A stretch of 64,000 nucleotides of DNA from Cyanophora paradoxa CCMP329 (taxonomy: Eukaryota; Plantae; Glaucophyta): contig QPMI01000133.1 of NCBI GenBank assembly GCA_004431415.1, positions 248,001-312,000 of the forward strand, written 5' to 3'. This document shows positions 22,288 to 58,201 of this stretch, in pieces. Below the pieces are notes generated by a model that saw only the letters and a list, made by a program, of their open reading frames with translations, had not been told where the DNA came from and searched no databases. A program made the position numbers and the translations under genes. The stretch's first letter is position 1. Each line of letters begins with the position of its first letter.

Positions 22288-25200
22288 TCACAGGTAAACG
22301 TCGGTGGCCATGGGGAGCCCTGCTGGCGATGCCCCCGGGTGGACGGGGCCTGTCCGCAGCTGATGGACGGTCGGCTGCAGCTGGCCGGAGCGAGCGAGCG
22401 GCTCCGCGTTCCAGCGCGCGCGCCGATCGCGATCCGCGGCTCGTGTACGACTCTGGTTCCTGGCGACGTACCCCATAACGAAGATGACGAGGGCGACGCC
22501 CCCGACGACGCCGACGCTGATGCCGGCGATCTGCCCCCCGTCAAGGCCGCTCGAGCCTCCCGCGGGCCTCTCCTGCCCGCCGCTCTGACTCGGGCTGGCC
22601 GCCCCCGACGCTGTTGCAATCGGCTCGCGATCGCCGTTGATGCTGCTGACGGCGTTGCGCGTGCACTGAGCCTTGGCGCTGGCGGTGCCGCTTGGAATCG
22701 CAAGGGAGTACGTCGCGCCGCAGAACGTGCCTGCAATCGCAAGTCATGATCAGCGAGTATTGATATTAGTATCGTGTGCGCGAAGAGAGAGGCTCACTGT
22801 TGCGAGAGAAGCCGAGCCCCGTTCCGAGGACCGAGGAGGGGCCCGAGTACGAAGCTGCAATGTCGACGGACGGCGTCGCGGCGAGCTGCAGGGCGTGGCG
22901 GCGCGTGCCGTTAACGCTGCCGACGGCCTCGGCGAAAGACGAGCGGCCGGCGAGCTGGACGCCAGCAACGCCGACGGACGGGTCGAGCCGGCGGAGGAAG
23001 TTGTAGACGAGGAGGAGCCAGTAGTCGTCCCGCGTGGCCGCGTCCAGCGAGTCGTAGTTCGCCGAGAGCCACGCCGCGAAGGATCCAGCGTTGTTGTCGA
23101 CACGGATCGTGAAGTTGAGGCGAGACGCGTTTGCGGGGACGGGCGCCGCCGAGCGGGACAGCTCCGCCTTGACCGCGGCGACGTACGGGGCCAGGCCGGC
23201 GAAGTTGCCTCCGACGGTGCGGACGGTGCCGCCTGACAACGCCGCGCCGTCGGAGAGCGGGAGCGTCAAGCCGCCGCTCAGGGACGCGTAGACAAGGGCC
23301 TGTATGATGGGCTCGGGTCCCTTCGCCGTGGGCGCGACGGTGAACGACCCGCCGCCGTCGGATGCGGGGCCAGCCAGCAGCGCTCCGAACAAGTTGACGT
23401 TGAGAACGATCGAACCCGTCGCAGAGCCGACGTACGCCATCTGCAGCGTCGATCAGCTCGATCGACACACTCGACCGGCGACCGCATCTGGGAACGACGA
23501 ACCTGAATCTCGATCGTCTTGGCCAAGTCCGTCGCGAAGGACGTGTTGCCGACTGCGCTCCGCAGCGCGCCAAGGACGGCGCGGACGAGGCGCAGGTTGC
23601 CGTACGCGGAGGCGGAGACGGGGTACAACGCCTGGAAGGCGGCCAGCGTGACGGCCTGCTGCGGGAACACGATGGAGACGGCGACGGGTTTGCCGGAGAC
23701 ATCGCGGAAGCCGCCAATGCCGGGCACGCCGGGCTGTCGCAGAATCGCCTAGTCAGCTTCAATGTTTTCGACGAGAAACATTTTCTATTCTTAAATCTGG
23801 TTCGGGCTAGGTTATAATTACAAACGCACCCAGGTGATGCGCTGGCCGTTCAGGGTCTGAGGAATGCCTCCAACGAGATACGGATCGACGGAGGACATGT
23901 CGAGCCCGTTCATCAGCGAGTCGGCATAGACGAAGTCGCGGAGCGCAGCGGCGGAGGGCGGGTTCTTGCCCGAAGCTGGATTCGCGACGCCAAAGAATCT
24001 GCGAAAATGGCGCCAATCAAAACCGGCGCGGCGTTTCGCGATAAATGTGTTTCGCGGCTCACGAGAACGTGATCTGGACGCCCTCCAACGCGCCGGTGGC
24101 CGAAGGCGAGAGCGCGCCCGCCTCGACGTCGAGCTGAAGGGCCTGATCGAAGGCAGCGATCTGAGCGGCCGCCGGGCCGATCGCGGCCGCCCGGGCGCGG
24201 ATGCGGGCGGCGAGCGCCGCAACGAGGCCGGCGGGGTCCGAGCGCGGGCTGGCGGTGAAGACGGCGGCGGCGGAGGCGTTGCCGGAGGCGGGGTACAGCG
24301 GGAACGCGACACCCAGGGAGCTGCGGGAGGTGACGTTGCGGGACTCCGGCCGAGAGCGGATCACGTGGGCGAAGTCATGGAAGACGGCGGCGGCCTCAGC
24401 CGCAGGAACGAGCGCCGTGGCGGCCGAGGTGTAGCGCCCGTCGACGCCGCGGACGGCCGCGCTGCCCGCAGCCGTCTCCGCCCAGGTGCCGGCGGACGCG
24501 TTGAAGCGCGCGAGAGAAACTGCGCAAAGGTTTCATTCAGCACTCTTCGCGCGGGGATCGGAGTCAGAAGCATTTATATGCATGCGCGCTCACTTCGCTC
24601 GGAGAGGAAGTCGAACGTTGCCGACGAAGGCACGAGCCCGGCGAACGAAACGGCGTCGGAGAGGTTGGCGGCGGGCAGGCTGTCGCAGCGGGCGCCGCAG
24701 CCGGCCCTGTAGGCCGCTAGCTGAACGACGTCCGAAGCGAACCGCTCGCTGCTGCCGTAGAGCGCCGCGGGCAGGCGGAGCGCGACGACATCGAGGGCCA
24801 GGTCGCTGGTGGCGTCGCCGAGGACGGAGTGCGCGAAGCTGGAGGGCAGGCCGACGCGTGGGTCGAAGCCGCTGAAGGCGATCTTCTGCGGAGGGTAGTT
24901 GATGGTCCTCGAGACGCAGAGCTGGATCGGGAGCAGCTCGGCGTCCTTGCGGGACGCGGATGGTGACGCGTACGCCGCCACGGGCGAGGTCCAGTTGCCG
25001 CCCGTCGACGCGCAGGTCCCGCACTCGAGGCTGCGGCGGCCGAGCTGCGACAGGAGCTGCCGCAGCTCGAGCGAGGCGGATGCGGTGCGGTCGATGCCGG
25101 CATCGTTGCTGAAGACGTTGAGGGTCCCCTCGACGAGGTTCTGGACGACGGCGTCCGTGTCGGGCGTGTACGAGTTGCAGTCGCGGACGTAGCGACTCGT

Positions 25201-28200
25201 CAGGTTCGCCGCGAGGCTGAGGGCGTCTTTCACGATGGAGGCGCTGTAGTCGGCGACGAAGGCGGCGCCGAGGACGACGGCGTACTGCGACGCGGCCGCG
25301 CTGACGGTCGCCTTGCTGTAGTCGGCGCCCTCGACGGCCTTCATCGAGCTCCGGAGCGCGTCGACCTGGATCTGGAGCAGGGCGGGGTCCGCGGCCGCGA
25401 GGCGGCGGCGGGGCGCGACGCTCTTGAAGGTCTCCAGCGCCTTCCGCCGCCGCGCGTTGACCGCTGCCGACTGCTGCGCCGACGACGTCGCAGTGATAAC
25501 GCTGCCGAAGGCGCAGACGTAGTCCTGTGCGCGCATGCACTTGCTCGTCGCCTCCTCCGTGTTCCGCGTGATGACGGCCGCCGCGTCCGCCGCCGACATG
25601 CCAGCGGTCGGGTCCTCCACGGCCACGGCCGCGAGGTCGTCGTAGGCGGTGAACGCGCCGGTGCTGTCGCGAATGTAGCCGCGGAACTTCATCATGCCTG
25701 ATCATGAGAGCGGAGCTCAGAAAATGCGAGAGCGAATCGGGCGGCGAAACGCTGAGAATTTCATGTAGGCTCACTTTTGACGGGGTAGGCCTTGATCTTC
25801 GGGAGGGTGCTGTCCATCGTGTAGGCCCGCAGCGTCGTCCTCTCGTTGTTCGCGGTCTCCTCCACCTCGAACGCGTACTGCAGCGGCGGGCTGCTCGTCA
25901 CCCAGTCGCTGCAGGAGAGGCGGTACTCCTTGGTCAGCGCGACGACCTTCTTGCTCGTGAGGAGGACGTCCTGCAGGCTGCCGTCCTGAAGCGCCTCGAG
26001 AAGCTTGCAGCTGCCCGACGCGGGGGGCTGCGGCGCCTCACCGTTACTTCTTCGCCGCGCCGACGGCCGCGAGCAATTCCGATTCGATAATTTCAGCCGC
26101 GCGCGCACCTTGTTTACGTCGAGCGTGATCTCCACGGATGCAAAGCGGGTCTTGCCGTCCTTCTCCATGGTGACGGCCAGCGCGAACGTGTAGCTCTGGC
26201 CAGGCCGCAGCACGTTCTTCTTCAGAACGAGCGAGGAGGCGGTGTCGGTTTCCGTGACTTCCTTGCTCGCGAGGTCGAGCGTGGCCGCGCTCTGGACGGT
26301 CCAGAGGTAGCGCAGCTTGTAGGCAGACTCGCCGTTGCTCTTGAAGTCGTCCGCATCGACGTCCTTGGGCGCCTCGACCGCGCCCGTGAGCTTGAGCTCC
26401 CGGAACGAGTTGACAACGCGCGACCCCTCGATCTGCACAGCGGCGGATCAGCGATGCTTGATATCGATTATGGAAGAAAAGCGCGAGCTGCGGTCCGCAA
26501 ACCGATATCGATACGGCGGGCGGAGAGTATTTCACGATGACGACGGACACCGAGGTGGCTGCTGCGGCGCGGTTGAGGCCGTCGTTGCGCGTCACCTGCA
26601 CGGAGAACGAGAACCTGCGATGCGGGCTAAGCAGGACCGGAGGAAGGCATCTGAAACATGATCAGGATCGGGGGCGGGCGCACGGCTTCTGGGGGGAGGC
26701 GGCGTCCGGCTGGAGGCTGCCGGAGCTGATCCGCAGCACGCAGCCGTTCTTGCCGGCGACGATCGTCACGCCAGCGCCCTCGGCCAACGCCCCGCTGGAG
26801 TCTTTAGGAAGGGAGTGCGCCGGAGATCCCGCGCCGACGGTCCACTTGCACGCAAGAGACGGGTCGAAACCGGAAATGCCGGTGGCGAGGTCGACGTTGT
26901 CGGGATCGAAGGACTTCGTGGCGTCGAGCACGACCTCCGAGTCCACGCCGATCGTGCTCGTGAGGGTGCGCACGCCGCCCGACTCTGAGAAGACGCGCGC
27001 CTCGGCGACGAGCTTGGCGGCCTTGATCGTGAGCTGCGTCGCGAACGAGTTCTTGAGGGCGGGGTCCGACTTGACGCGGCCCTCCACCCGAACCACATAG
27101 GGTGCGGCGCGCGGCTGGGGCTCGCATCAGCAAAGCGAAACAACATGGAGCGCGAGCAGAGAAGGAGCAGCAGAGGCGTCGACGCGGATGCTTGCCTGCA
27201 ATAAAGCCTTTCCGGTGGGGCCGACCGTGAAGGAGGAGGAAGTAGCGCCATTCTGCTCGACATCATCGATGAACCACCTGAACTCCATTTGCACAGCTGC
27301 GAAAGCGTTGTTTCAGGCACAGGATTTCAATGAACGTGACTATTGAATACGATGGGGGCATGCGCACTGCTGCTCGAGGAACACGCGCTGAATGCGGCCC
27401 TGGCTGACAGGGTCAGGTCGACCGTCTTTTGCGTCTCGAGCTTCGCCCCCTCCGCGATGACTACGCTCGGGATCTCCGTATCCACCTTCGACAGCTGCAG
27501 CGGAGAAATTAATCAAATGAAACATCGCAGATTATAAAAATCAGTTAAAGACCGCGATCGCTCTTACCGTGACGGTCTGCTGCGAGCTGGAGACGCCCAG
27601 AAAGTTCTTGCCGACCAGGCCGATCTGGTAGGTCCCCGTCGCCGCGGACGCTAGGAGGCGCAGCGTCGTGCTCGAGACGATGTAGCTCGAAGCGGCTGCG
27701 TGAAAAGCGATCCGTCTCAACGTAAACGCGAGCGGCCACTCACAACAAATTGAAGAAGTTCCATATGCATGCTCGCGCACCGACGTCGGACCCGCCCCTC
27801 CTTACGGTCCATTGGAGCGTGAGGGGCCGCCCGCACCCGCCGCCATCGATCTTGGCGATGTACTCGGCGATGTCGCACCGTCCAACAGACGTGTCGCCGG
27901 AGAGTTGAACGACCGGCGCCGGCGGGTTGGTCGGGGCCTGAATGATTACGGGGCTCGCGGTAGCCGGAATGGGGGCAGAGTTGCCGATCCTGCCGAAGGC
28001 GATTCACAACCTAGAGAAAGCAGGAAGATTCTGCACATAGAATTCGAACGCACGCATTCAGAATTGAAGCACCGGAGTTGGCGATGCTCGCTGCAGTTGA
28101 AGGGCCTGCAAGCGCGGCAGCGTTCTGGTCGTTCACTCCTGCGATTGTGACCTCTAAGACGGAAGGGCTGACGAATGAACAGAACGAGGCTGCTCGCAAC

Positions 28201-31200
28201 GCGTGAGAGGCGCGAGGCTGAAGGAAAGCATTCAGCTATGAAACTCGGACCAGGGCCAAAGAGCGTAGCAGCGTCCTGGAAGACTGCGCTGGCGCGGACG
28301 TTCTTTGCAGAGTCCAAGGACGCCGCAGCGCTCCCCTTGTAGCTCTGCCGCAGTGGATATCGATGCAGTGCAATCGAAACTCTTGCGAAAGCTACAAGAT
28401 TAAGCACCTGAAGCATGTCGGAGTCTTCGCTCAGCGTGAACAGGATGATATTGCCCTTCGCGCGAGAGAGTCAGCAAGTTGAACCGAAATTAGAGTTCAC
28501 TTTTAATGTTAATCGCACCGCGTCTGAGAACTTGGCGGAGACGATTTGGATGGGAGCTTTGGGAGTGCGGGACACAGGAAGGCGCGCCACTGGGGCGTCT
28601 GTCGAGGAGATGCGTGACCCCTCAATGAACGTCACCTGCTTCGTGTTGACGAAGAGATTGAGGGTTCCGGCTCCCGTGGCGTAGAGTTTGTAGGCTGCGC
28701 GCGCGCACGCGCAACAAACGCTCGGTTATAGATGCGCAGTTCGATCGCGAACGGGACCGGGCTCACATATAGTAACCACGCCGGTAGTGCCAGGCACGCG
28801 AGCGATCTGTTCGAGATCGGGAGTGCTCGGTCATTCTTCACGGCATGCCGCGCGCTCAATTCAACTTCGTTCGCACCTTCAAGTCGCGGAAGCAGCCGAT
28901 GACACCTTGATAGCGGACGTACGAACAGAGTGGCGTGGCTCCCGCCGCCGTTGTAAAATCGGCAAAGAAGGGAAGCTTTGCGTAGCCGTCCGTGAACGCA
29001 AACTGGAAACCGCTGTTCGGAGATCTGAGGACGTTTGCACGTTCAGAAAACGGGAGGAAATTCGAAAACTAAGCCTGCCATGCTTCGCGGGCAGCGCACT
29101 GGTCGAAGTCGACGACGTTGCCGCACGCGTCGATGCCTGTGACGCGGATCGAGTTGTCGGCCTCCGCGGCCATAGGGCCCGCTATGTCTTCCTTCAGAGC
29201 AGCGGAGGCCTGGACGCCCGACAGCGTATTCGGCTTGACGGAGAGCGAGAACGCCGCCCCGAACGTGTTGCCGGAGCGCAGCGCGTGGATCTGCTGGCGG
29301 CCCACGGAGCAGACCGAGAAGCCGACCTGGTAGACCCCCGCGAGGGTGAACGTCTGATAGGAGACGTTCCAATTCTTCGCCGCGCCGTCGACGCTGGGCG
29401 TTGCGACCACGGGAAGAATCTGCACGATGCTGGCCGGTGCCGCTAACGAAAGAGTCTGCAGAGCAAGTGGCGCGCGGTCAGCCAAACAACGGCGACAAGG
29501 CGCACGCGTAAAGCAGCACGTGCGAATTCGAAACGCGGTGCACGCGCACCGAAGCTGCCCAGGGAGACGCCATGGAAGTCACGGGGCAGGTGGCGCCGGT
29601 AGAGATTCCGAACCCGAGCGTCGTGGTACCCGCCCTCTCCGCGCTGTCAACGGACTGGTAGGCCGCCGGCTCCACGAGGTTCCCGAAAGCGTCGCGAACT
29701 GCCACGTAGCCTGTGATGAGCAGGCCGGCGCGCGTCTCGGACGCCGAGAGCCATTCGAGGCCGGAAGCGGCGAAATTTGCGAAGGCAGAATCCGGCGCCG
29801 TCGCGGGCTCGCCAGGGTTGACGAACACCGTGATGCTTGAGCCGATGCCCGCTGGTTGATCGTTGATGGAGACAGAGATTTCGTAGTAGCCTGCCCTGAA
29901 TGCGGTCACTGACACGGCGTACGTGCCGTCCGCGTTCATCGTGACAGTCGCAGTCGCGGCGGATGGGTGAATGTTGGGATTGAGAGCGGCCCTGAAATTA
30001 TCCCCGAGGACAAAAGCGGCGTCGCTGCGCGAGGAAAGGCGCAATCGGATTAAGCGGAGTCGCGGGATCTAAAATCGGACGCGCATGAGGCGCACGACGA
30101 CGCGGGTTGGGTCGAGGTGGGCCCACGGTACGTAGGCGTCACCTTGACGTTGCTGAATGCACTGACGCGCGCGCCCTTCGCGTCGCGCAGCTCGATGACG
30201 AGAGTGAAGGCCCTGCCCGCCGTGTATACCTTGCACACGCCGCTGGCAACGCCGGACTTGGAGACCGCAAGGTCGCCAGCAGCAAGGGTGATCGAAGTGA
30301 CAACGGAGGACGAGCCGCCCACGGCGCCGCTGACAGCGATCGTCGCACTCCCGTCGACGGAGGTCTTGCCCGTCAGCGTGTACCGGTCGACCCACGTCCC
30401 TTCAGGGCCGTAAGCGCCCGCCGTGGAAGCGACGTCGAAGCGGGCCGCGTCAGACAGCGAGATGCTGGCGGCAGCCGGCGGCGCGCTCGCTGCTCCTGCC
30501 GAGGCGCGGAACGCAGCGGCCGCAGGGCACGCCGACGTTATCGCACTCGCGGGGACGTTGCCCATGAAGTTCCCATTGCTGCGGAGAACATAAGAGGAGG
30601 ATTGCACCTAATGCTTTAATTTCGAGTGGAGCACACCCGTCCCGGTAAACGGCGAAGAACGAAATCGGGAAGCCCTTCAGCGCGCTGATCGAGGCGGGGA
30701 TGCCCTCGAAAGACGCCGTAGATTGCACCGCCGGAAGCGCGAAGAGTCGGATGGGAGAGTTCGAAATCTTTCCAGAGTTGGCGGCATCGCCGGTGGAAAG
30801 GCTCAGCTGCAGCTCATAGGTCCCTCTGCGCGGGGGGACCTGGAACTGGACCAGGAAGGTCCCTGCCGACGCGTCGCGATTCAGGCCCAGGCAAGTCGAT
30901 CAACGTGCGTGCAGCATGCGGACCGTTTTGGAAGTTGGTGATCGTGGGTGCGCTGCTGCTATCGGAGGCGGGCGGCGACCCGTAGTAGCTGAAAGAGGCG
31001 TCGACCGGGTCGGTCGCAGCGAGCGACACGAGCTGCAGAACGTGTACTCAGATCCAAAAGCCAGTGCGTCATGACCATGATCAGAGGGTAAAATTGTTAT
31101 CAAGGCACCTGTGCGGACAAAACGCCTGCACTCCTCCCAGATACGAGAGATCCTTCCGCATCGTATGCCTGGACGGAGAGAGAGGTGGCGGAGCCGACTG

Positions 31201-46200: not shown

Positions 46201-49200
46201 GCTCGTGCAGCTGGCCGCGGCGCCGGAGATCGCAGCGCCCCGTCCGAGCCAAAGGTCACCGTCAGGGTCGCGGAGTCGTGGGTGACGCTGCTGGCGGCGA
46301 CGGTCGGGGCCGCCGGGGCGGTGGATGTGGTCGTAAAGCTTGCGGCGGCGGAGGAGCCCGAGGTGCCGGCGCTGTTCGTGACGTTCGCGCTGCAGCTGTA
46401 CTCCGTGCTGGCCGAGAGGCCCGCGAGGTCGAAGGTCGCCGTCGTGGCGCCCGCCGAGACGGTTGCGGAGCCCGACCACGCCACGGCGCTGCCACTCGTG
46501 CAGCTGGCCGCGGCGCCGGAGATCGCAGCGCCCCCGTCCGAGCCGAAGGTCACCGTCAGGGTCGCGGAGTCGTGGGTGACGCTGCTGGCGGCGACGGTTG
46601 GGGCCGCTGGGGCGGTGGCGACGACGGGGGCGGCAGCGGTCGTGAAGCTTGCGGCGGCGGAGGAGCCCGAGGTGCCGGCGCTGTTCGTGACGTTCGCGCT
46701 GCAGCTGTACTCCGTGCTGGCCGAGAGGCCCGCGACGTCGAAGGTCGCCGTCGTGGCGCCCGCCGAGACGGTTGCGGAGCCCGACCACGCGACAGCGCCG
46801 CCGCTCGTGCAGCTGGCCGCGGCGCCGGAGATCGCAGCGCCCCCGTCCGAGCCGAAGGTCACCGTCAGGGTCGCGGAGTCGTGGGTGACGCTGCTGGCGG
46901 CGAAGGTCGGGGCCGCCGGGGCGGTGGCGACGGCGGGGGCGGCGGCGGTGGTGAAGCTTGCGGCGGCCGAGGAGCTTGAGGTGCCCGCGTTATTATGAAC
47001 CAGTGCAAAACATGAGATAGAGGTTTCAGCGGGCACGTTCGTGACTTGGAATGTTGCAGGGCTTGTTACGGCTGTCGGATCGATATCATTACTTCTAAGT
47101 TCGTACCAAAGCATTTCTTCAGTTTCGGTTTTTATGCAGTATGCATATACCATGTTGATGGCATCTCCACTGCCAGCTAGGGTATCAAATCGGACGGAAA
47201 GCGTTGCAGATTGATGTGTGATCGTGGACACGGCGACAGTTGGGGGAGAAGGGGGTGGCGCCAAAGTCGTGAACACCACTGTTTCGGATTCGAGAGAGGT
47301 TCCCACACAGTTGGTCACGGTTGACGTACAGGTATAGGTGGTGTTCGCGGTTAGCTTGAAGCTGAAGCTGAAGAATGCGTATTCCGAGCCGTAAGCGATG
47401 GTTCGTGAATCTGACCAAACAGAATCGCCGCCATCCGTGCAGCGGGCCAACGCGCTGTTAATAGGCGCGCCACCGTCCGAGGCAAAAGAAAAGGTAAGGC
47501 TTGCAGAGTCGTGGGTTACGTCACTGGTGCTGAAACCAATTGGAGGCGCCGGAACAGTGGCGTCGATGGCCGCTGTGTTGAAGGTTGCATCGGCAGAATC
47601 AGGAGAGGTCCCGGCGCTGTTGGACACTCGCGCTCTGCATGTATACACTGTGCCCGCAGTGAGTCCCTGAAATCCGAAGGTTTCCGACGGTGCAGAGTCG
47701 ATTACAGGTTTTGAATCCGACCATACTTCAACGTCACTTCCAGCTGCAAAGCAGCTGGCCGTGGCGTTGGCAATGGCAGCGCCTTCGTTTGAGCCGATCG
47801 CAAAATATACGGTGAGGGTGGCAGAGCTGAACGCGACGTTGTTGATCTCAAGGGAGGGAGCGGCAATGGCGAACGTTTGCAAGTTTAATACTTCAGATTC
47901 GACGGACGTGCCGATTCCATTGGTGACCGTCGCCGTGCACATGTAGGCCGTGCTTGCCATGAGATCCGTGACGACAAAGGTCGCCGTCGTGGCGCCCGCC
48001 GAGACGGTTGCAGAGCCCGACCACGCAACGGCACCGCCGCTCGTGCAGCTGGCCGCGGCGCCGGAGATCGCAGCGCCCCCGTCCGAGCCGAAGGTCACCG
48101 TCAGGGTCGCGGAGTCGTGGGTGACGCTGCTGGCGGCGACGGTCGGGGCCGCCGGGGCGGTGGCGACGACGGGGGCGGCGGCGGTCGTGAAGCTTGCGGC
48201 GGCGGAGGAGCCCGAGGTGCCGGCGCTGTTCGTGACGTTTGCGCTGCAGCTGTACTCCGTGCTGGCCGAGAGGCCCGTGAGGTTGAAGGTCGCCGTCGTG
48301 GCGCCCGCCGAGACGGTTGCGGAGCCCGACCACGCGACGGCGCCGCCACTTGTGCAGCTGGCCGCGGCGCCGGAGATCGCAGCGCCCCCGTCCGAGCCGA
48401 AGGTCACCGTCAGGGTCGCGGAGTCGTGGGTGACGCTGCTGGCGGCGACGGTCGACGTCGGGGCCGCCGGGGCCGTGGCATCATTAGTGGCGAGCGTCGT
48501 GAAGCTTGTTGCAGCGGATTCGGGCGAGATGCCAGCGCTGTTTGCAACAGTTGCCGTGCAGCTATACTCCGTGCTTGCAGCCAGATCCGTGAGGTCGAAG
48601 GTCGCCGTCGTGGCGCCCACCGAGACGGTTGTTGAGCCCGACCACGTGATGGTGCCGCCACTCGTGCAGCTGGCCGCGGCGCCGGAGATCGCAGCGCCCC
48701 CGTTTGAGCCAAATGAAACGACCATGGTTGCAGAATAGATCAAAATATCAGTAGCAGTAACCACTGGGGGTGCTGGTACAGAGACAATCTCTGGGAGGAC
48801 GCATTGTGTCCCAGACACAACGTTCGGGCTGTTGCACGAGCACTGCGGGATGCCACCGTCGAGGTACGTGTCTCCAGCGGTGCAGTTGGAGTACAAGCAG
48901 TATATGCCCATCCCAGCCCTTACAGTGGAGTGGCTCAAGGCAGCAGTGCAGATGCAGAAGGAAACCAGACCTTTGTCCGCGCATTCAGGTACAGCGGTGC
49001 AGGTGTTGCCAGAAATAAAGTTTTTGCCCGCGCACAAACACTGGGGAACGCCGTCGACAAGGTACGTAGCTCCAGTGTCGCACATGGAGTAGACGCAGTA
49101 ATCGCTGCCGCCAGCAATCACAGTGTAATGGCCTGAGGCTGCGCTGCACCTGCAATCCGAGACCAGGCTTGTGTTTGCACATTCGACGGAGGCAGCACAG

Positions 49201-52200
49201 ATGACGCCCGAGAAGCCGACGTCGACCACATTTGGGCTGCTGCACGCGCACTGGGGGACGCCACCAGCGATGTAGGTGGCACCAGCAGCACATTTGGAGA
49301 AGACGCAGTACTCTTTGTCGCTAAACGTTTCGGTAAAGGCGGGGCATCGACAGCCCGAGACGAGGCTCTTGTCCATACAGTGAGGAAGGGGGGCGGCGCA
49401 GGTGTCGCCTGAAACAATGTTTGGAGTCTCGCACGAGCACTGGGGAATGCCGTCAACGAGGTAGGTGGCTCCAGTAGTGCATTCTGAGTAGACACAAAAT
49501 TGGTCGATGCCAACAGTCACGTTGCTATGGCCAGAGCTGGAAGAGCACAGGCAGCTTGAAATTGGGCTCCTATCCCCACACTCAGGGAGGGAGCAGATGG
49601 TGCCTGAGACAACGTTGGGGTCATTGCACGAGCACTGCGGGACACCGTCGACGAGGTAGGTCGCGCCAGCAGTGCATTCGGAGTAGACGCAGTACTGACT
49701 GCTGCCAGCGATCACGGATAGATGGCCTGAAGCGGCAGTGCAAGCGCAGCCCGCAATCTCGCTCTTGTCAGAACACTCGAGGAGACAGCTGGTGCCCGAT
49801 ACTGTGTTGGGGCTGCTGCACGAGCACTGTGGGACACCGTCGACGAGGTAGGTCGCGCCAGCAGTGCATTCGGAGTAGACGCAGTACTGAGTACCACCGG
49901 CCGTCACGGAAAGATGACCGGAAGCGGCAGTGCAAGCACAGCCCGCGATCTCGCTCTTGTCAGAACACTCGGGGAGACAGCTGGTGCCCGATACTGTGTT
50001 GGGGCTGCTGCACGAGCACTGTGGGACACCGTCGACGAGGTAGGTCGCGCCAGCAGTGCATTCGGAGTAGACGCAGTATTGACTGCTGCCAGCGATCACA
50101 GTGACGTGGCCTGAGGAGGAAGAGCAAAAACAGCTGGAAATCAGGCTTGCGTCCGCACACTCCGGAGCGCATGTAGTGCCCGAAACGAAGTTGGGGCTGC
50201 TGCACAAGCACTGCGGGATGCCTCCCGCAATAAATGTGGCCCCGGCGGCGCAGCTGGAGTACACGCAGTAATTCTGGCCGTCATCTGTAGTGACAATGGC
50301 GTGGCCCGGTGCAGCACAGGTGCAGCTCGAGACCAGGCTCTTGTCCGAGCACTCGATCGACAGGCTATGGACGGTGACATGATCAGCTAATTAAAGGTGG
50401 ATCGATATCTGTCTCAAAATAGTGCTCACCTGTGCGCGACGATGACGCTATGATGCCAGGCGGCATAGAAAGCTGGAGCAGAAGGGAGACTCCCGTCCGC
50501 CGAAAGGAAAGCAGTCAGCCCGGCGCCAGGTGTGACATAGGTGAAGCTCGGGCCCTGATCAGTTACAACAGCGCCAGCTCTGCGCGATATTATCAGAAAC
50601 CACACTCATGGTAAAAGCTTTCGACCAAATGCAAATGTAGACGTGCGTACCCGTCCCCAGCAACAACACCGTCGATCCTCTCGTTCGTTTGCTCTGTGCC
50701 GGTGGCGTCGAAGAAGCGGATGGCCCCCTTAGTTCCGCTGCTCGCGTCGTTCACAGCCAGGCGCCAGAGGCCGCCTCTGCGTGAGAAAGTGCGACTTAGC
50801 GATCGAATGCTAGAGCTCGCGGTCGTGGCCGCGCGAAGGCCAGCCGGCAAGCAAACGGTATGCACTTAGTTGACAGGACGGCAATTGCAGGCCCGACTTG
50901 ATTAGTATTAGAAAGGCTCTCTAGTCCGACGAGTCCGGGGTCAATTAATATTGTTGTCCCAGCCGCGCCAAAAGCGGTGGCAGATCCTGTATCCAAGCTG
51001 ATCTGCGCGGAAGAATCACTGTGCTGGCCAAGCTTAAGGGGCCTCGATCGCGAGCCGGAATATGCACACCTTCCACAGCTTGCTGTTCGCGACCATGTAA
51101 ACAGTTCTGGCACTTGGATCGGCAGCGAGCGAATCCCCTTTTGTATTGGCGAGAATCGCTGGAAGATCGAAGAGCTTCACGGCGGTTCTGCAGCCGCCGG
51201 GAGCCATACCAAAAAGGGTGAGCGTCCCTGCAAGAGGCGGGGTTTCAGGCATTGAGCACAAAGTTGACAGTTGCAGCGTTTTCATTCTATAGCTATAGCT
51301 ATCAAATGGAAGTTGCGCGCTGACCGCCGGAGTTGGCAGTCCCCCAGACGACCAGGTTCTTGGACTTCGAGTAGGTTATCGCCACTGGCACGTACGGCCC
51401 TGCAGGCGGAGCGGGAATCCCGTCAGATCTAGAGCGACGATGTCGATGCGGGCCTCGCCGAATCGCTGAAATTAATGTATCATTTCAAACCACGCGCCTC
51501 CCGGCTGGGCAAAGCTGTCGGAAGAAGGGTCGTCTCCGCTCCAGCACACAGTGACCTCGCCGACGTGGCCCGCCGCGAGGTTGATCCAGCCCAGATATCC
51601 AAGAACGTTGGTGTCGGATAAGTGCACGAAGTACAGATCGTTCGCAGATGCGGCGGCGAGCCCGACAAGATACCTGCGAAAGACGTTGACCCGAATCGAT
51701 ATTCCAATTTAACATTATGTGATTGAGATGGAGCTTCAGCGTGTGCGAAGCTGTTTTTGGACTTACCCAAATCTGGTATCTAACCCTCTTTGCGCAGCCG
51801 TCCTGGAGCTTAATCCGTTCGTGCCGGACGTCACTTGGGTTCCTGTTCGGACACAAAAGGGTAAATAAAATGGGCTGCTTGAGAGATGCGAACACCAAAG
51901 GATTCGCGCCTGAGAAGCTTCCAGCAATTATTTTAGCCTCGCGGTTCCCGTTTACTTGCCAAATCAAAGAACACGGGACAAGCTTGTGGCCAGTAGATAT
52001 TAGGTTGTAGCCGTTTTCGTCAAATTCGTCTTCATTGATGTATGTGTAAACTGTGTAGACACCGCCGAGCGATGCTACGTATAGATCGCTGGAAAACAGG
52101 TTGTACTCGATTGCTGCGTGAATGCACCCGTGTTACGCGCACAGCCCGTGCCTCTATAGCTAAATCTGGATATTAGCAGAACGCACTGCTAATTGCTGAT

Positions 52201-55200
52201 TGATTAAAAGGGCTCAATTGGTAGCCGAAGTTCACAGCATTCCCAACACCTGCACATATGATTAAGTAAGGCTTCAAATTCTGATCATGCAAATGGCTGC
52301 AAACCCTGAGAGAAATCCGGAGCATATTTATCTCCTGCAATGAACGAAAAGCCGCCGCGGGGCAAACCAGATGGATCGCCGGGAGCAGGGGCGGCACAAA
52401 CGCCCAAGGGGTACAGAACCGTGTTCGGGCTGCTGCAAGAGCACTGTGGTACGCCGCCGACGAGGTAGGTGGCGCCAGCAGTGCATTCGTAGTAGACGCA
52501 GTACTGGCTGCTGCCGGCCGTCACGGTGACGTGGCCGGAGGAGGAAGAGCAAAAGCAGCTGGAAATCAGGCTTGCGTCCGCACACTCCGGAGCGCATGTA
52601 GTGCCCGAAACGAAGTTGGGGCTGCTGCACAAGCACTGCGGGACACCGTCGACGAGATACGAGGCGCCAGCAGTGCATTCGGAGTAGACGCAGTACTGGC
52701 TGCTGCCAGCGATCACGGATAGATGACCGGAAGCGGCAGTGCAAGCACAGCCCGCGATCTCGCTCTTGTCGGAACACTCGGAGAGACAGCTGGTGCCCGA
52801 CACTGTGTTGGGGGTGCTGCACAAGCACTGCGGGACACCGTCGACGAGGTAGGATCCGGAGGCGCCAGCAGTGCATTCGGAGTAGACGCAGTATTGACTG
52901 CTGCCAGCGATCACAGTGACGTGGCCTGAAGCGGCACTGCAGACACAGCCCGCGATCTCGCTCTTATCGGAACACTCCGGAGCGCATATAGTGCCCAAAA
53001 TGAAGTTGGGGCTGCTGCACAAACACTGCGGGATGCCTCCCGCAATAAATGTGGCCCCGGCAGCGCAGCTGGAGTACACACAGTACTTCTGGCCGTCATC
53101 AGTCGTGACAATGGCGTGCCCGGGTGCAGCGCAGGTGCAGCCCGAGACCAGGCTCTTGTCCGAGCACTCGATCGATAGGCTACGTATACGGTCGATGTCA
53201 TGATCAGCCAATATTCATAAGATGTGGTTCGGCTTTTAAAATAGTGCTCACCTGTGCGCGACGATGACGCTATGATGCCAGGCGGCATAGAAAGCTGGAG
53301 CAGAAGGGAGACTCCCGTCCGCCGAAAGGAAAGCAGTCAGCCCGGAGACAGGAGACATATAGGTGTAGCTCGGGCCCTGATCAGTTACAACAGCGCCAGC
53401 TCTGCGCAATCGGTATCATCAGAAACCACACTTTCGGTAAAAGCTTACGACCAAATGCAAATGCAGGCGCGCGTACCCGTCTCCGGCAACAACACTGTCG
53501 ATCCTCTCGTTCGTTTGCTCTGTGCCGGTGGCGTTGAAGAAGCGGATGGCCCCCCCAGTTCCGGTGCTCGCGTCGTTCACCGCCAGGCGCCAGAGGCCGT
53601 CTCTGCGAGAGAAAGATGATTATAGAGGCTCGAGTCTGTGCAAAGAGGCCAGCATGCAAGCAAACAATACGCACGCTGTTGACAGGACTGCAAGCCCCCA
53701 AAGTGAAATGGAATCTGGAATGTACGCAGAGTCGATATCTCTAATGACGGGGTTGATGGTTGCGCCCGCCGCGAAATTGGAGTAACTTCCATCATCCAGG
53801 CTGATCTGCGCGGACCGGACGTCTCATCTATTTGAATGCATGCGCAACAAGAAGCAAATCACACGACAGTCGCATATACGCACGTACCTTCCACAGTTGG
53901 CCTTTCGTCAACAGGTACACCCAACTTGAACTTGGATCGGCAGCAAGCGAATCCCCCCATGTATCCAAAGCAATCGCCGGAACATCGAAGAGCTCCACGG
54001 TGGTTCCGCAGCCGCCGGGAGCCATACCGAAAAGAGTGAGCGTCCCTGCAAGGCGGCGGTTCAGGCACCGAATCGCGGGCATGTAATCATGACGACGCGC
54101 CCGATGCCTGAGAAGAGCCACTGCCTTTAGCAGCTGCCCAGACAACCAGGTTCTTGGGCATAGAGTAGGTTATTGCCACAGGCGCGTACGGCCCTGCAGG
54201 CGTAACGTGAGGATCGGCAGCTGCAGGGCGACGATGCGGGCCACGTGCGCGAAGTGCTGAAAATGTAACTTCAAACCGCGCACCTAGCGGCTCGGCAAAA
54301 CTGTCGACAGAAGGATGATCTCCACTCCAGCACACAGTGACCTCGCCGACGTGGCCCGCCGCGAGGTTGATCCAGCCCACGTACTGGCGCAGACCAGTGC
54401 CGGGAAGATGATTGTGAGCGAAGTACAGATCATTCACAGATGCAGCCGCGAGCCCAACAAGATAGCTAGGACGTTCAAGACTCATGATCAGGAATGACCG
54501 TACTTGCGAACAAGCGCAACAAGAATGCACTGCAGAAAGAAACGCTCACTCAAACTGTGTGTTGAGCCCTAGTTGTGCAACTGTCCGGGGATTTGGACGC
54601 GTGATTCGTTCCCCCCCGGATTGCAAATTTATACCTGATCATGAGAATGCCAATCATCAGCGCGCTGCGCATGTCGCCCAGTTGACTGCACGAGGAAACG
54701 TACCAGCGGTGCCTCCTATACCAGCGATGATTCTTGCTTCGCGGCTACTGTTCACTTGCCAAATAAAGCAGGGGCGAATGCCTTCATAGGTGGCAACCAC
54801 ATATAGATTGCTGTTGAAGGGATTGTACTCCATTGCTGCGCGTGCGCGTGCGTATATATATGCTGGATGGCACACCATTGCAATGTGAAACGTGCGCAAC
54901 AGGTTCCGCACTCACTTTTGATGGGTCTTACAATATTATTGTAGCTTGCAGGATATGGCGCGGTGCGACCGAAGTTTGCGTCCCTTCCGACCCCTGCACC
55001 GCTGTTGGATCGATGCACATGCACATGCGGGCATGCTGCAATAATTACATACCCTGAGCTGAATACGCCGCGTATTGATTTCCTGCAACGTAAGCGAAGC
55101 TCCCGCGCGAGAGGTCTGCGGGGTGTCCTGGCGCAGGAGCCGCGCAGACAGTGCCCTGAACCGTGTAAGGATCGCTGCACGCGCACTGGGGCACGCCGCC

Positions 55201-57528
55201 GACGAGGTAGGTGGCTAAGCCGGTGCAGCTGGAGTACACGCAGTACTGGCTGCTGCCGACGGACACAGTGACGTGGCCATGGCCTGAGGCAGTGCAGAAG
55301 CAGCCGGAAATCAAGCTCTTATCTGGACACTCTTCGCGCATTCTGCTGTCGGCATGAGCAAAGAGCAAGCGGAAATGCCAGCGAGCTCTGATTTCACCTT
55401 TGTGCGACGATGACGCTGTGATGCCAGGCTGCGTAGAAGGCTGGAACGGAAGGAAGACTCTCGTCGGCCGCGGCCAGGAGGAAAGGCGAAATGCCACCGG
55501 CAGGAAAAGAATAGGTGAGACTTCGGCCCTTCCACGTTGGAACAGCACTAGCTCTGCTTGACTACAATGATCAGACGCCACGCACAGTGAAATCGTGTGA
55601 CCAAGTTAAGCGTGCGCACCCGTCTCCGGCAACGTTAACAAGATCGTCGATCCTCTCGTTCGTTTGCTCTGTGCCGGTGGCGTCGAAGAAGCGGATGGCC
55701 CCTCCTGTTCCGCTGCTCGCGTCGTTCACCGCCAGGCGCCAGAGGCCGCCTCTGCGAGAGGAAGTGCGAATCAGATATCTGGAGCTCTATAGAGCCCGCG
55801 CACCGAGGCCGTGCAGGCCGTGAGGCTAGCCGGCAAGCTAAAGCAATCGGTGCGCACCCAGTTGACAGGACAGCGAGCCCAGGACGGTGTCCCGACATCT
55901 GCTGGTCAAGGGTAATGGTCGTGCCCGCCGCGAAATTGGAGTAACTTCCATCATCCAGGCTGATCTGCTCGGAGGTCTCAACTATTTGATTGCATGCGCA
56001 ACTAGAGGCCGGTCGTATAAATCTACGTACCCTCCACAATTTGCTATTAGTCAACAGGTACACCCAGCTCGAACTTGGATCAGCCGCAAGCGAATCCCCA
56101 TATAGATTCACAACTATTGCCGGAACATCGAAGAGCTTCACGGCGGTTCCGCAGCCGCCGGGAGCCATACCAAAAAGGGTGAGCGTCCCTGCAAGCCGGC
56201 GGTTCAGGCGCCGAATTCGAGTCGTGAGCGTATCATTGTGGGCGACGCGCCCAATATCACATCAGTGCTGCTGCCTTTTGCAGTTCCCCAGACGACCAGG
56301 TTCTTGGACTTCGAGTAGGTTATCGCCACTGGCACGTACGGCCCTGCAGGCGGAGCGGGCCGGGAGGCACGCGCACGTGAGATCGATGCAGACCGCGCCA
56401 AATTGCTGTTGATATTGTAATTTAAAACCGCGCATGCGCGCCTCCCGGCTCGGCGAAGCTGTCGGAAGAAGGGTCGTCCCCACTCCAGCACACTGTGACC
56501 TCGCCGACGTGGCCCGCCGCGAGGTTGATCCAGCCCAGATATCCAAGAACGTTGGTGTCAACGTCGGACAATTGCAAGTGCACGAAGTACAGATCGTTCG
56601 CAGATGCGGCGGCGAGCCCGAGAAGATTCCTGTGCACGTGATACTATGATAAGTGCGGGTCAGAAGGCTAGGGCTAGCTATAGGATTCCCTTGGCAAGCG
56701 GAAACGTTTGCACTCGGGATCACCAGAAGTTCGTGTCGAGCCCAGGCTGTGCGACTGTTCTGGATCCGGAGCTAAATATGCTCGCGCCAGAGCTCAGGGA
56801 GCTCCCCCCTCCAGCAATCTTTCTGGCCACGCGGTTGCTGTTCACTTGCCACACGTAACCGACACGATCCCAATTATTCTCCCCCGACGCAACATAGATG
56901 TTGCTGTCGAATGGGTTGTATTCGATTGCTGCGCAACAACCCATTCAAGTTCGTGATCAAGTTCGGACTCGTGCACGTTGCAAGTGATCGAGCATCGATA
57001 TTGATATCGTGCAAGATTAGGACGTATACATATGCCATGATGCATATATGAATTACAGCGCGCACTGTGGATTGCAACATAGTTTCCTGTGAAGGGGTTC
57101 GCGACGGCGCCGAAGTTGGTTTCGTTCCCAACTCCTGCATGCGGTCATGCCGTTGCTGAGGCCGGACCGAAGCGCATATATACGCATATATGCGCGTGCG
57201 CATGCCCACGAACCCTCGGAGAAAGGCGCAGCAAACGGATTTCCTGCTATATAAGTGAAACCTCCAATGGGAAGGCCAGAATCTGGCCCAAAGACATCGA
57301 GCTGAGCAAAAGCTGCGCAAGTGTAAATGCTAAGCTTGAGGTACGTATACGTAGCAGCGACGGTTCATCGGTTGTATATTTGTCGATCGTCGTTAACTTC
57401 AAAAGCTGCCAACTGCAAGACGCACCGACGGCCGCGGAGAGCAGAGCGTGGACCACTACAGAGAAGCCGAGAAGGCGCGTTGTGCGAGTTCGGCGTTCCA
57501 TGCATGTGCGTCCAAGTGCGTGCGCCAT
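22288..57528 (-). CDS. Giant (~10,000 aa predicted) type I membrane protein: 3 head modules + 8-Cys repeats + ~58 FN3-like + filamin-like + REJ/GAIN-like + TM
   Basis: Hydrophobic N-terminus (M at 57528 or 57501: ..LLGFSVVVHALLSAAVGASC). A chain of minus-strand GT-AG exons includes one 18.6-kb exon at 31754-50364. Filamin-like DGTYAVSVTAFRAGYYEISVSIN / VRDAFGN at ~29070-30300. REJ-like VVLDATKSFDPD, LRYLWTV, LVLKKNVLRPGQSYTFALAVT, LSCSDWV..LQYAF at ~25600-27950. TM LDGGQIAGISVGVVGGVALVIFVMGYV at ~22465-22545; stop at 22288-22290. Not every junction was checked, so single-gene continuity is partly inferred. Confidence 0.75.
32340..46945 (-). repeat. Coding tandem array of 48 near-identical FN3-like units (309-bp long and 294-bp short variants)
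   Basis: Unit: APAAPTVAASSVTHDSATLTVTFGSDGGAAISGAAASCTSGGAVAWSGSATVSAGATTATFDLAGLSASTEYSCSANVTNSAGTSGSSAAASFTT(AAAPVVAT/TST). It carries FN3 hallmarks P..P, DGG..I, L...TEY, N..G.S. Counted by eye from the gtcgt(g/a)aagctt motif. Confidence 0.9.
46948..48770 (-). repeat. Six further FN3-like domains, partly diverged and partly identical to the array consensus
   Basis: Diverged units such as LTAGTVYTCRARVSNSAGTS, LTANTTYTCTSTVTNCVGTS and VPAETSISCFALVHNNAGTS lie next to consensus-type segments at ~47975-48460. Confidence 0.85.
48790..50364 (-). repeat. Eight tandem ~62-aa 8-Cys repeats
   Basis: Pattern C-x8-CxC-x16-C-x4-C-x13-CxC-x10-C, e.g. ECSDKSEIAGCACTAASGHLSVIAGSSQYCVYSECTAGATYLVDGVPQCSCSSPNTVSGTSC. 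Four more copies at ~52400-53175 and one at ~55140-55335. Confidence 0.9.
50428..56935 (-). repeat. Three tandem copies of a multi-exon beta-rich head module (~50428-52112, ~53250-54835, ~55398-56935)
   Basis: Recurrent exons in the same order with matching introns: A[IM]EYN.F.S.[IL]YV, WQVN..R.A..IAG, GLAAAS.NDLYF, GWINLAAGHVGEVTVCWSGD, GPY.PVAITYS..KNLVVW, GTLTLFGMAPGGC..V.LFD.PAI..GDSLAADPS, GLWRLAVNDAS.GT.GAIRFF.ATGTEQTNERID, FY..WHHSVIVAQ. Confidence 0.85.
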
Positions 57529-58201
57529 CTCTATCCGCTCACCGTGCCTGCATGCGCAGCTGCAGCTGCAGCTGGTCGGTCACTCAGAGGGCTCAGTGAT
57601 TAGGATCTATAGCTAGCTATATGCACTCACGCGTATACGTATACAGCGATCGACCGCGCACGGCGCGGGCCGAGGCCTAGGCTTGACTCTCAGGCGTGCA
57701 CGTGACTTCGACGACGACGAGTGCCACTGGGGTGACTGGGCCAACATGTACAGCGTACGCGACTAGTACGCGTACGCCGTCGACGTCGGCGCCGCGGCGC
57801 GTCGATCGCGTACTACGTATATACGGTACGCGTCGTGGCCGGGGCATGCAATTGCAAGTTTGCAACGTGCAACGTTGAACGTCGAACTCGGAACCTGAGT
57901 CGACGTCGGAAGCGCAACTTAAAAAGCTTGCTGCCAGGCTGGCAAGCTTGCAATTGAAGTATACGTATACGGTACACCGTACTACGGACTACTACGTAGT
58001 ACGTATACGTACTACGGTACTATCATAGTATACCGGTAGTCTATAGCTACGTACTACGGACCTCTACCGTGGGCTCTACGGTATACTGGTACAGCTCCGA
58101 ATCCGCGGGGGTACGTATACGTACTACGGACCAGTCTACGCGTACGCGTACGGTATGTACATGTATGATGTATCATGTACATGGATCCGGAGTCCTAGCT
58201 A

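What the first reader, a model, noticed from the sequence alone, without database searches (positions are those of the whole stretch)
22288..57528. Predicted ~1-MDa single-pass surface receptor/adhesin with an unusual domain combination
Seen: N to C, a signal-like peptide, [beta-rich head + 8-Cys repeats] x3, ~54 tandem FN3 plus ~4 diverged FN3-like domains, at least 3 filamin-like repeats, a REJ-like region, a helical GAIN-like region, extra domains, one GxxxG-rich TM helix and a ~58-aa tail ending DVYL. Established: REJ/GAIN occur in polycystin-1-type receptors, and long FN3 arrays act as extensible stalks. Inference: a stalked sensor or adhesin projecting three ligand-binding heads roughly 200 nm from the cell (58 domains at ~3.5-4 nm each), with possible mechanosensing, mating or microbe-recognition roles. 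Unlike PKD1, it has no PLAT domain or multi-TM channel region. I know of no described protein with this architecture, but could not search.
Basis: partly seen in the sequence, partly recalled or inferred. Interest (0 to 1): 0.85.

Follow-up and report, generated by a model that had tools for sequence, protein, structure and literature searches.

The report
Giant FN3-stalk REJ surface protein, Cyanophora
The alga Cyanophora paradoxa has a transcribed, roughly 35-kb gene, cut short in the public annotation, that most likely encodes one membrane-anchored surface protein of about 10,300 residues, with three unclassified heads on a rod of 54 fibronectin-type domains and a base like part of the human kidney protein polycystin-1.

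Summary
The described anatomy is real. It lies on the minus strand (ATG 57528, stop 22288-22290) of Cyanophora paradoxa contig tig00000523 and has about 53-56 exons.

- **Confirmed:** an RNA-supported signal-peptide exon. Three paralogous ~400-aa heads (66-71% identical), followed by 1, 4 and 8 copies of a 64-aa 8-Cys module. Six diverged plus 48 near-identical FN3 units. Filamin repeats, a full REJ domain (104 bits), one TM helix and a 57-aa tail ending DVYL. Total about 10,300 aa, about 0.99 MDa.
- **Caveats:** 22 of 47 complete array units carry 78 one-base deletions. All are deletions, and 86% sit in G/C homopolymers, which looks like PacBio consensus error rather than decay. GAIN-likeness is unproven: no GPS or GAIN profile hit and a poor model. 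The head and the Cys module match no known family. No RNA bridges the array.
- **Annotation:** the public model g1870 covers only the last 2,574 aa.
- **Family:** five paralogs share the ~2,400-aa base. This scan has already noted related giant REJ/FN3 genes on other DNA of this genome.
- **Verdict:** a real giant single-pass surface protein and a new variant of REJ-type or FN3-rod proteins. Its function (adhesin, surface or flagellar filament) is inferred.

The parts
57426..57528 (-). Exon 1: start codon and signal peptide. It has an Arg-rich n-region and a hydrophobic core, with an A-x-A-type site spanning the splice junction.
   Evidence: First in-frame ATG after a stop. RNA-like contig X17 joins 57426 to the exon starting at 57312, removing intron 57313-57425 (GT..AG).
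55398..57312 (-). Head 1: a ~400-aa beta-rich module in 9 short exons. Its fold is unassigned.
   Evidence: Curated model has no stops. Five of its introns are RNA-supported. 66-71% identical to heads 2 and 3. No Pfam hit exon by exon.
55141..55332 (-). Cys repeat 1 (64 aa, 8 Cys).
53252..55140 (-). Head 2, in 10 exons. The first of these is the tail of the Cys-repeat exon.
   Evidence: Eight of its introns are RNA-supported, including GC..AG intron 54046-54100.
52396..53169 (-). Cys repeats 2-5 (four repeats of 64-66 aa, 8 Cys each), within one 875-nt exon.
   Evidence: No Pfam family.
50430..52395 (-). Head 3.
   Evidence: Exons placed by homology to head 2. Intron 52250-52304 is RNA-supported. 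Versus head 2, exons are 72% nt-identical and introns 62%.
48795..50354 (-). Cys repeats 6-13 (eight repeats of 64-67 aa, 8 Cys each). They mark the start of the giant exon that begins at 50364.
   Evidence: Two-repeat AF2 model has pLDDT 65. No fold match: best Z 2.8 and best Foldseek E 3.8.
46990..48785 (-). Six diverged FN3 domains.
   Evidence: Their profile hits FN3 domains of titin (5.4e-19), contactin-4, Robo3 and NCAM over their full length. Four of the six hit PF00041 singly.
32338..46989 (-). Array of about 48 near-identical FN3 units (309 nt, or 294 nt with a shorter linker). 25 of the 47 complete units are intact; 22 carry one-base deletions.
   Evidence: TRF finds 48.2 copies with 96% matches. 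Pfam fn3 scores 151.7 bits on minus frames only. 78 deletions, 67 of them in homopolymers, and no insertions.
31103..32337 (-). Pro/Ser/Thr-rich linker and about four diverged FN3-like domains. The annotated protein P0006 starts at an internal Met near 31894.
   Evidence: Same open frame as the end of the array. fn3 scores only 15-17 bits, below the cut-off. P0006 mapped.
29481..31100 (-). Filamin-type Ig repeats.
   Evidence: PF00630 scores 59 bits with two stretches in P0006. Exon-wise scores are 26.2 and 15.9 bits.
27330..29480 (-). Unassigned beta-rich region between the filamin repeats and REJ.
   Evidence: Exons tile against the paralogs. No Pfam hit.
25520..27320 (-). REJ domain.
   Evidence: PF02010 scores 104.1 bits, E 8.9e-30, profile positions 7-443 of 452, at P0006 residues 1147-1619. 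Exon-wise scores are 42.5 and 20.2 bits.
24063..25519 (-). Helical segment followed by a beta segment (the 'GAIN-like' region). It ends in a Cys-less GPS-like stretch.
   Evidence: Conserved at 54-75% identity in 5 paralogs. Low-confidence model shows nine helices followed by strands. GAIN structures are the top two VIA hits, but within helical-bundle noise. No GPS or GAIN Pfam hit and no PDB sequence hit.
22798..23998 (-).
   Evidence: Best-modelled part of the post-REJ model, with pLDDT 50-78 and alternating helices and strands. No family assigned.
22462..22530 (-). Single TM helix with small-xxx-small (GxxxG-type) motifs.
   Evidence: The N-terminal half of the helix is conserved in the paralogs.
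22288..22461 (-). 57-aa Arg-rich cytoplasmic tail ending DVYL, plus the stop codon.

Best explanation
This is one gene of the glaucophyte alga Cyanophora paradoxa, truncated in the public annotation. It encodes a type I membrane protein of about 10,300 residues.

A cleavable signal peptide sends the chain into the secretory pathway. One C-terminal helix anchors it, and 57 Arg-rich residues stay in the cytoplasm. About 10,150 residues lie outside the cell. From the tip inward these are:
- three tandem copies of an unclassified ~400-aa beta-rich head, spaced by 1, 4 and 8 copies of an unclassified 64-aa 8-Cys module;
- a rod of 54 FN3 domains;
- a conserved base of about 2,400 aa, made of FN3-like and filamin Ig domains, a REJ domain, a helical-plus-beta region and a juxtamembrane alpha/beta region.

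Five paralogs in the same genome share this base, so the gene belongs to a lineage-specific family with a constant base and variable distal parts.

The protein most likely works as a long, semi-rigid surface filament. It would hold its heads up to roughly 200 nm from the membrane for binding or contact, as an adhesin, a surface-coat fibre or a flagellar hair.

**Shown:** strand, splicing and expression of the 5' third; domain identities (FN3, filamin, REJ); the paralog family; the predicted topology.

**Inferred:** the 78 frame breaks in the array are assembly errors; one transcript spans the whole locus; the protein is extended; the heads bind something.

**Confidence:** about 0.75 that it is one intact giant gene for a single-pass surface protein. 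The overall figure is lower because it includes the filament or binding role.
For: - Pfam fn3 hits occur only on minus-strand frames.
- RNA-like contigs from three studies remove 15 short introns that are GT..AG or GC..AG on the minus strand, including the signal-peptide junction.
- Curated 31-exon N-terminal model of 2,710 aa has no stops. The C-terminal model threads to the stop codon. Its exons tile without gaps on spliced paralog proteins.
- The window's own annotated protein P0006 starts at an internal Met inside an FN3-like domain. That Met lies in an open frame running on from the array.
- REJ scores 104 bits and filamin 59 bits.
- Array breaks: 78 deletions, no insertions, 86% in homopolymers, in units with few mismatches to the consensus. 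The assembly is PacBio RSII with Quiver, and Illumina correction cannot place reads uniquely in repeats (PMC6704402).
- Between head copies, exons are more conserved than introns, and codon position 2 changes least.
- Five paralogs share the base at 47-69% identity.
- Topology: the N-terminal signal peptide, the single TM helix and the Arg-rich stretch after it.
Against: - No RNA or long-read evidence bridges the 14.6-kb array, so one transcript is an inference.
- As assembled, the array is out of frame in 22 units.
- The copy number of a 96%-identical array may be wrong. Its length is about that of the PacBio library's ~15-kb average insert.
- The runs are only guessed to be RNA, and one contig is unspliced across intron 1.
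- Surface location, extension and binding are untested.
- Neither the head nor the Cys module resembles any characterised binding domain.
Confidence: 0.62

Rival explanations
1. Two or more separate genes. An N-terminal secreted protein carries the heads, Cys modules and FN3 units. A separate REJ-TM protein corresponds to the public model g1870.
For: The public annotation starts g1870 at about 31894. No protein containing the Cys repeats was found among database proteins of 621-4,508 aa. No RNA evidence spans the array.
Against: The annotated start is an internal Met in the middle of an FN3-like domain. It lies in a frame that stays open back into the array. The annotated models of all five paralogs found (P0001-P0004, P0007) likewise lack the N-terminal part, as expected if gene callers or contigs break at arrays. 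The authors themselves say the models need manual curation.
Confidence: 0.12
2. A decaying pseudogene. The frameshifts in the FN3 array are real, and only 5' fragments are still transcribed.
For: There are 78 frame-breaking deletions in 22 units as assembled.
Against: - There are no insertions. 86% of the deletions are in homopolymers and recur at the same sites.
- The affected units are otherwise near-identical to the consensus.
- More than 5,300 flanking codons in about 55 exons are intact with good splice sites.
- Exons are conserved over introns between head copies.
- The 5' part is spliced in RNA-like contigs.
Confidence: 0.07
3. A polycystin-1 or adhesion-GPCR-type mechanosensor. A true GAIN domain cleaves itself, and pulling on the stalk exposes a tethered ligand or gates a partner channel.
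For: The REJ domain is followed by a helical-then-beta region. In a low-confidence model, the two best of 48,161 structural matches are GAIN domains: 4dlo_B (Z 11.4) and 6v55_A (Z 11.0). A stretch resembling the Trp-containing start of a GPS motif is conserved in all paralogs.
Against: - No GPS or GAIN Pfam hit at E up to 10, and no PDB sequence hit.
- The model has pLDDT 41.5.
- The Z values lie inside the range the tool warns about for helical bundles. Foldseek finds nothing.
- The four GPS cysteines and the H-L-T/S site are absent.
- About 470 extracellular residues lie between this region and the TM helix.
- There is no 7TM or 11TM part to receive a tethered ligand.
Confidence: 0.1

Closest known systems
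Sea urchin sperm receptor for egg jelly (suREJ1)
   Same: A modular surface glycoprotein with distal binding modules, a REJ module and a membrane anchor (PMC2120838 abstract). The single TM helix and short tail are from my memory of that paper, not checked here.
   Different: suREJ1 is about 210 kDa and has one EGF and two C-type lectin modules. This protein is about five times larger. It has 54 FN3 domains, filamin repeats, three unclassified heads and 13 unclassified Cys modules. No EGF or lectin profile hit was found.
Polycystin-1 (PKD1) / PKDREJ / Ectocarpus Esi0130_0068
   Same: An extracellular REJ domain preceded by Ig-like repeats. REJ proteins are already known from an alga, the brown alga Ectocarpus (PMC4700764).
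   Different: Those proteins have a GPS motif next to the first of 6-11 TM helices, and a channel-like region. PKD1 also has PLAT. Here there is no GPS hit, one TM helix, 57 residues after it, no PLAT and no channel region.
Giant FN3/Ig rod proteins (titin-type FN3 arrays; long repeat adhesins)
   Same: Tens of tandem FN3 domains forming a rod. The FN3 profile's best solved match is titin.
   Different: Titin is intracellular and mixes Ig with FN3. Here the rod is predicted to be extracellular, to consist of 48 nearly identical units, and to be anchored by a REJ-containing base.
Other giant REJ/FN3 genes of Cyanophora paradoxa noted by this scan (s1-509139, s1-534776, s1-511120)
   Same: Same genome. 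Each is described as a REJ module plus tens of FN3 or Ig-like domains. Two are described as single-pass membrane proteins and one (s1-534776) as secreted. All are cut into pieces in the public annotation.
   Different: Those notes describe a sugar-enzyme-like (GH16-like) head or other modules. None found mentions the triple head plus 8-Cys module arrangement. I did not test their claims.

Membership tests
Fibronectin type III (PF00041) | A ~90-100-aa beta-sandwich matching the fn3 profile over its length. | tested here: met
   151.7 bits on the minus-strand ORF. A profile of the six diverged units hits solved FN3 domains: titin at 5.4e-19, plus contactin-4, Robo3 and NCAM, aligned over positions 4-92 of 98. 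Four of six units hit PF00041 singly at E 2e-4 to 8.5e-4, below the gathering score.
REJ-domain proteins (PF02010) | Full-length match to the REJ profile above the gathering score. | tested here: met
   P0006, the window's own annotated protein, scores 104.1 bits against a cut-off of 25, over profile positions 7-443 of 452. Paralogs score 96-102 bits.
Polycystin-1 family (PKD1/PKD1L/PKDREJ) | GPS motif or GAIN domain immediately before the first TM helix. | tested here: not met
   No PF01825 or GAIN hit at E up to 10 in three paralog segments or in P0006. The four GPS cysteines and the H-L-T/S site are absent from the conserved stretch. About 470 residues separate that stretch from the TM helix.
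Polycystin-1 family (PKD1/PKD1L/PKDREJ) | PLAT domain and a 6-11-TM or channel-like region. | tested here: not met
   There is one hydrophobic helix and 57 residues after it. No PLAT or PKD_channel hit.
GAIN domain (adhesion GPCR / PC1 type) | A helical subdomain A packed on a beta-sandwich subdomain B that ends in the GPS. | tested here: inconclusive
   The AF2 model has pLDDT 41.5. GAIN structures rank first and second in the VIA wide search (Z 11.4 and 11.0). Unrelated helical proteins follow at Z 8-10.8, and the tool sets the bar near 13 for helical bundles. Foldseek best E is 0.18, with 4dlo_B at E 1.0.
Filamin/ABP280 repeat (PF00630) | Ig-like repeat matching the profile above the gathering score. 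| tested here: met
   59 bits with two stretches in P0006. A third candidate scores only 15 bits.
EGF-like or other known Cys-rich modules, for the 8-Cys repeat | Match to an EGF, laminin-EGF, TNFR or furin-type profile or fold. | tested here: not met
   No Pfam family over 4.5 repeats. The Atlas gives only weak EGF leads at 0.76-0.82, below the 0.9 level. The two-repeat model (pLDDT 65) has best Z 2.8 and best Foldseek E 3.8.
Beta-propeller (NHL/YWTD-type), for the head | Five to eight repeated four-stranded blades, or a match to a propeller profile. | tested here: inconclusive
   Exon-wise Pfam found nothing. Exon-profile searches against PDB sequences found nothing. hhalign self-comparison of the three-head alignment found no internal repeat. 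The propeller idea is only my impression from strand-like motifs.

The most novel reading that the evidence does not exclude
This family could supply the flagellar hairs (mastigonemes) or surface fibres seen by deep-etch EM on Cyanophora. Each hair would be a single membrane-anchored polypeptide of about 1 MDa. Its polycystin-type REJ base would couple the hair to the membrane. That would be an independent parallel to the PKD2-mastigoneme link in Chlamydomonas. The three heads and the 8-Cys module would then be new extracellular domain families.
Probability: 0.12. Interest if true: 0.8.

Novelty: new variant of a known kind. Interest (0 to 1): 0.55.

Why it matters
Glaucophytes are one of the three primary-plastid lineages, and their cell surface is almost unstudied at the molecular level.

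A transcribed protein of about 1 MDa, with a polycystin-type REJ module at the base of a 54-FN3 rod, shows that REJ modules are used outside animals in single-pass, channel-less proteins. With its paralogs, it gives concrete candidates for the two kinds of flagellar hairs and for the surface features seen by electron microscopy in this alga.

It also adds two recurrent modules, the ~400-aa head and the 64-aa 8-Cys repeat, that no profile, sequence or fold search here could place.

On the practical side, the public gene model is truncated. The tandem array also carries assembly-type frameshifts that would mislead any proteome-based analysis.

Tried and rejected
- **Plus-strand reading.** The long plus-strand ORFs in the array give only spurious, below- or near-threshold Pfam hits (DUF1294, a pilin). 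They are GC-rich antisense frames.
- **Automatic gene model.** With a codon-usage score it skipped or invented exons in the lower-GC head region. I replaced it with RNA-supported and homology-placed junctions.
- **Homologs of the Cys repeats.** None in proteins of 1,417-4,508 aa or 621-1,977 aa. Other lengths were not searched.
- **Atlas search of the 367-aa exon.** No usable hit.
- **Contig look-up for P0006.** Not on record.
- **Weak bacterial hit P0005.** This Calx-beta adhesin scored E 2.4e-5 as a sum of four stretches. It is not significant in a pairwise BLAST, so I do not use it.
- **Flanking ORFs.** No Pfam hits.
- **Head.** Exon-wise Pfam, exon-profile PDB searches and a self-repeat search all came back blank.
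- **Post-REJ region.** The profile against PDB sequences was blank. Foldseek was blank.
- I redid it by reference.
- **Joined head model.** It was used only in local scripts.
Full report
**Where and what**

The finding's coordinates are exact, but the gene runs on the minus strand. FN3 profile hits appear only in minus-strand frames. The first in-frame ATG after a stop is at 57528. The last exon ends ...DVYL, followed by a stop at 22288-22290.

The window is GC-rich (0.56-0.77 across the gene) and its introns are short. Relatives of the largest C-terminal exon are all EukProt proteins of Cyanophora paradoxa. One of them, P0006 (tig00000523_g1870.t1, 2,574 aa), is the window's own annotated protein. 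It maps exon by exon to 31894-22291 and ends DVYL. Intron size and GC content fit the published assembly: mean intron 86 bp, 67.6% GC, PacBio RSII with Canu and Quiver (PMC6704402).

**Expression and gene model**

I laid contigs of four runs from three studies on 51701-57700. Their RNA label is only a guess. They remove 15 introns of 55-113 nt whose ends are GT..AG on the minus strand. Two of them are GC..AG.

One contig joins 57426 to the exon that starts at 57312. This defines a 103-nt signal-peptide exon. One contig of another run is unspliced across that intron.

I built the N-terminal model from these junctions and from the three-fold paralogy of the heads. It has 31 exons and 2,710 codons down to 47001, with no stop. 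The 3' part threads from the last array unit to the stop codon through 22-25 short GT..AG introns. Its exons tile without gaps on the spliced paralog proteins.

The exon that starts at 50364 appears to run through the whole array to 31760, about 18.6 kb. That gives about 53-56 exons in all. Predicted size is about 10,300 residues and 0.99 MDa before glycosylation.

**The FN3 array and its frame breaks**

Tandem Repeats Finder reports 48.2 copies of a 309-nt unit at 96% matches, from 32338 to 46989. Units are 309 nt, or 294 nt with a 15-nt shorter linker.

Of the 47 complete units, 25 are intact. The other 22 carry 78 one-base deletions, no insertions, and 67 of the deletions fall in G/C homopolymers. 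The same sites recur. Two units carry 13 and 20 events each. The broken units otherwise differ little from the consensus (131 mismatches over all 47 units).

This is the signature of residual PacBio consensus error in a repeat that short reads cannot polish. It is not the signature of decay. That reading is an inference, and I could not test it because the one read-laying run had been used on the 5' region. The copy number is uncertain for the same reason.

FN3 identity does not rest on summing near-identical copies. A profile of the six diverged units upstream of the array hits solved FN3 domains of titin (5.4e-19), contactin-4, Robo3, NCAM and Tie2 over their full length.

**The distal part**

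Three ~400-aa heads are 66-71% identical to one another. They are followed by 1, 4 and 8 copies of a 64-67-aa module, each with exactly eight cysteines. Between heads 2 and 3, exons are 72% identical at the DNA level. Introns are 62% identical, against a 57% background. Codon position 2 changes least. The copies are therefore under coding constraint.

Neither module could be placed:
- No Pfam hit exon by exon.
- No database protein of 621-4,508 aa with the Cys repeats.
- Only sub-threshold EGF leads from the Atlas.
- A two-repeat model of beta-hairpins (pLDDT 65) with no fold match: best Z 2.8, best Foldseek E 3.8, Atlas TM up to 0.35.
- For the head, exon-profile searches of PDB sequences and a self-repeat search were blank.

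The spliced head was not sent to any fold or search tool, because only unaltered window sequence is allowed. That joined step is left out. My impression of propeller-like strand motifs is untested.

**The base**

In P0006, Pfam finds a full REJ domain (104.1 bits, profile positions 7-443 of 452) and filamin repeats (59 bits, two stretches). The four FN3-like domains after the array score below threshold.

After REJ comes a 367-aa exon with about nine predicted helices and then strands. The next exon carries a conserved stretch that resembles the start of a GPS motif. It lacks the four cysteines and the H-L-T/S site.

The model of this region is poor (pLDDT 41.5). GAIN structures are the top two of 48,161 chains in the wide structural search (4dlo_B at Z 11.4, 6v55_A at Z 11.0). 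Unrelated helical proteins follow at Z 8-10.8, and the tool warns that helical bundles reach such values by chance. Foldseek, Pfam and a PDB sequence-profile search find nothing. GAIN-likeness is therefore open.

Two things argue against a working GAIN/GPS unit. About 470 further extracellular residues, an alpha/beta region that was the best-modelled part, separate it from the membrane. There is also no multi-TM part.

The TM helix (22462-22530) has GxxxG-type motifs, and its N-terminal half is conserved in the paralogs. The 57-aa tail is Arg-rich next to the membrane, which fits a cytoplasmic position.

**One gene or several**

The annotated start of P0006 is an internal Met in the middle of an FN3-like domain. 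It sits in a frame that stays open back into the array. The annotated models of the five paralogs found likewise lack the N-terminal part. The authors state that their models need curation. I put about 0.75 on one gene. RNA across the array is still missing.

**How it probably works**

Signal peptide, one C-terminal TM helix and a positively charged tail predict a type I protein with about 10,150 residues outside the cell. At a textbook 3.5-4 nm per FN3 domain, 54-58 domains would give a rod of about 200 nm. This is arithmetic, not measurement.

The constant base with variable distal parts across paralogs suggests a common anchoring or assembly function, with diversified tips. Deep-etch EM of this alga shows two kinds of flagellar hairs, one of them long and narrow (PMC6704402). 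In Chlamydomonas, a polycystin (PKD2) anchors the mastigonemes (PMC7265326). A role as a surface fibre or flagellar hair is therefore worth testing, but nothing here shows it.

**Comparison with what is known**

- The closest known design is the sea urchin egg-jelly receptor, which has binding modules plus a REJ module (PMC2120838).
- REJ proteins are also known in a brown alga, but there they carry GPS and several TM helices (PMC4700764).
- The protein fails the tests for polycystin-1 membership (GPS, PLAT, multi-TM). It shares only the REJ module.
- I found no paper on FN3 or REJ proteins of Cyanophora.
- This scan has already noted related giant REJ/FN3 genes on other pieces of this genome. 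None of those found has this head and Cys-module arrangement.

**Verdict**

This is a real, expressed giant single-pass surface protein and a new variant of known kinds. Two of its modules remain unplaced, and its function is untested. Interest is moderate at 0.55.

Noticed in passing
window 56344-56441 and 54046-54100 (minus strand): Two RNA-supported introns use GC..AG instead of GT..AG. GC donors are also the best-fitting choice at the paralogous positions of the other heads (56189-56250, 51400-51497). The unusual donor seems to have been kept through the head duplications.
   Followed up: partly
window 52633/53024 and 53402/55637: Two RNA-like contigs join distant points. One skips 390 nt inside the Cys-repeat exon. 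The other links head 1 to the matching place of head 2, with 10 foreign letters between. These may be assembler paths through near-identical repeats, or module-skipping isoforms. I could not tell which.
   Followed up: no
window 32998-35736, 36883-39651 and others (plus strand): ORFs of 700-990 aa lie antisense to the FN3 array. They arise from the 76% GC repeat and give only spurious Pfam hits. They are not evidence of genes, and they recall the 'bidirectional ORFs' discussed for this genome (PMC6704402).
   Followed up: yes
C-termini of P0006 (window 22291-22300), P0001, P0002, P0004, P0007: Cytoplasmic tails differ in length and sequence. Five of the six proteins nevertheless end in two or three hydrophobic residues (..VYL, ..ILV, ..VLV, ..QLI). 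This could be a C-terminal export or sorting signal.
   Followed up: no
P0004 (tig00020965_g16847.t1), residues 1-400: This paralog's annotated N-terminus looks like the end of a subtilisin-type peptidase. It is followed by dozens of short Pro-rich repeats before the shared base. It may be an annotation fusion or a different distal part.
   Followed up: no
window 57284-57700: One RNA-like contig (X20, the deepest here) runs unspliced through intron 1 and on past the start codon. Several contigs have loose ends at 57546 and 57575. These could reflect an unspliced precursor, DNA in the run, or an overlapping upstream transcript.
   Followed up: no
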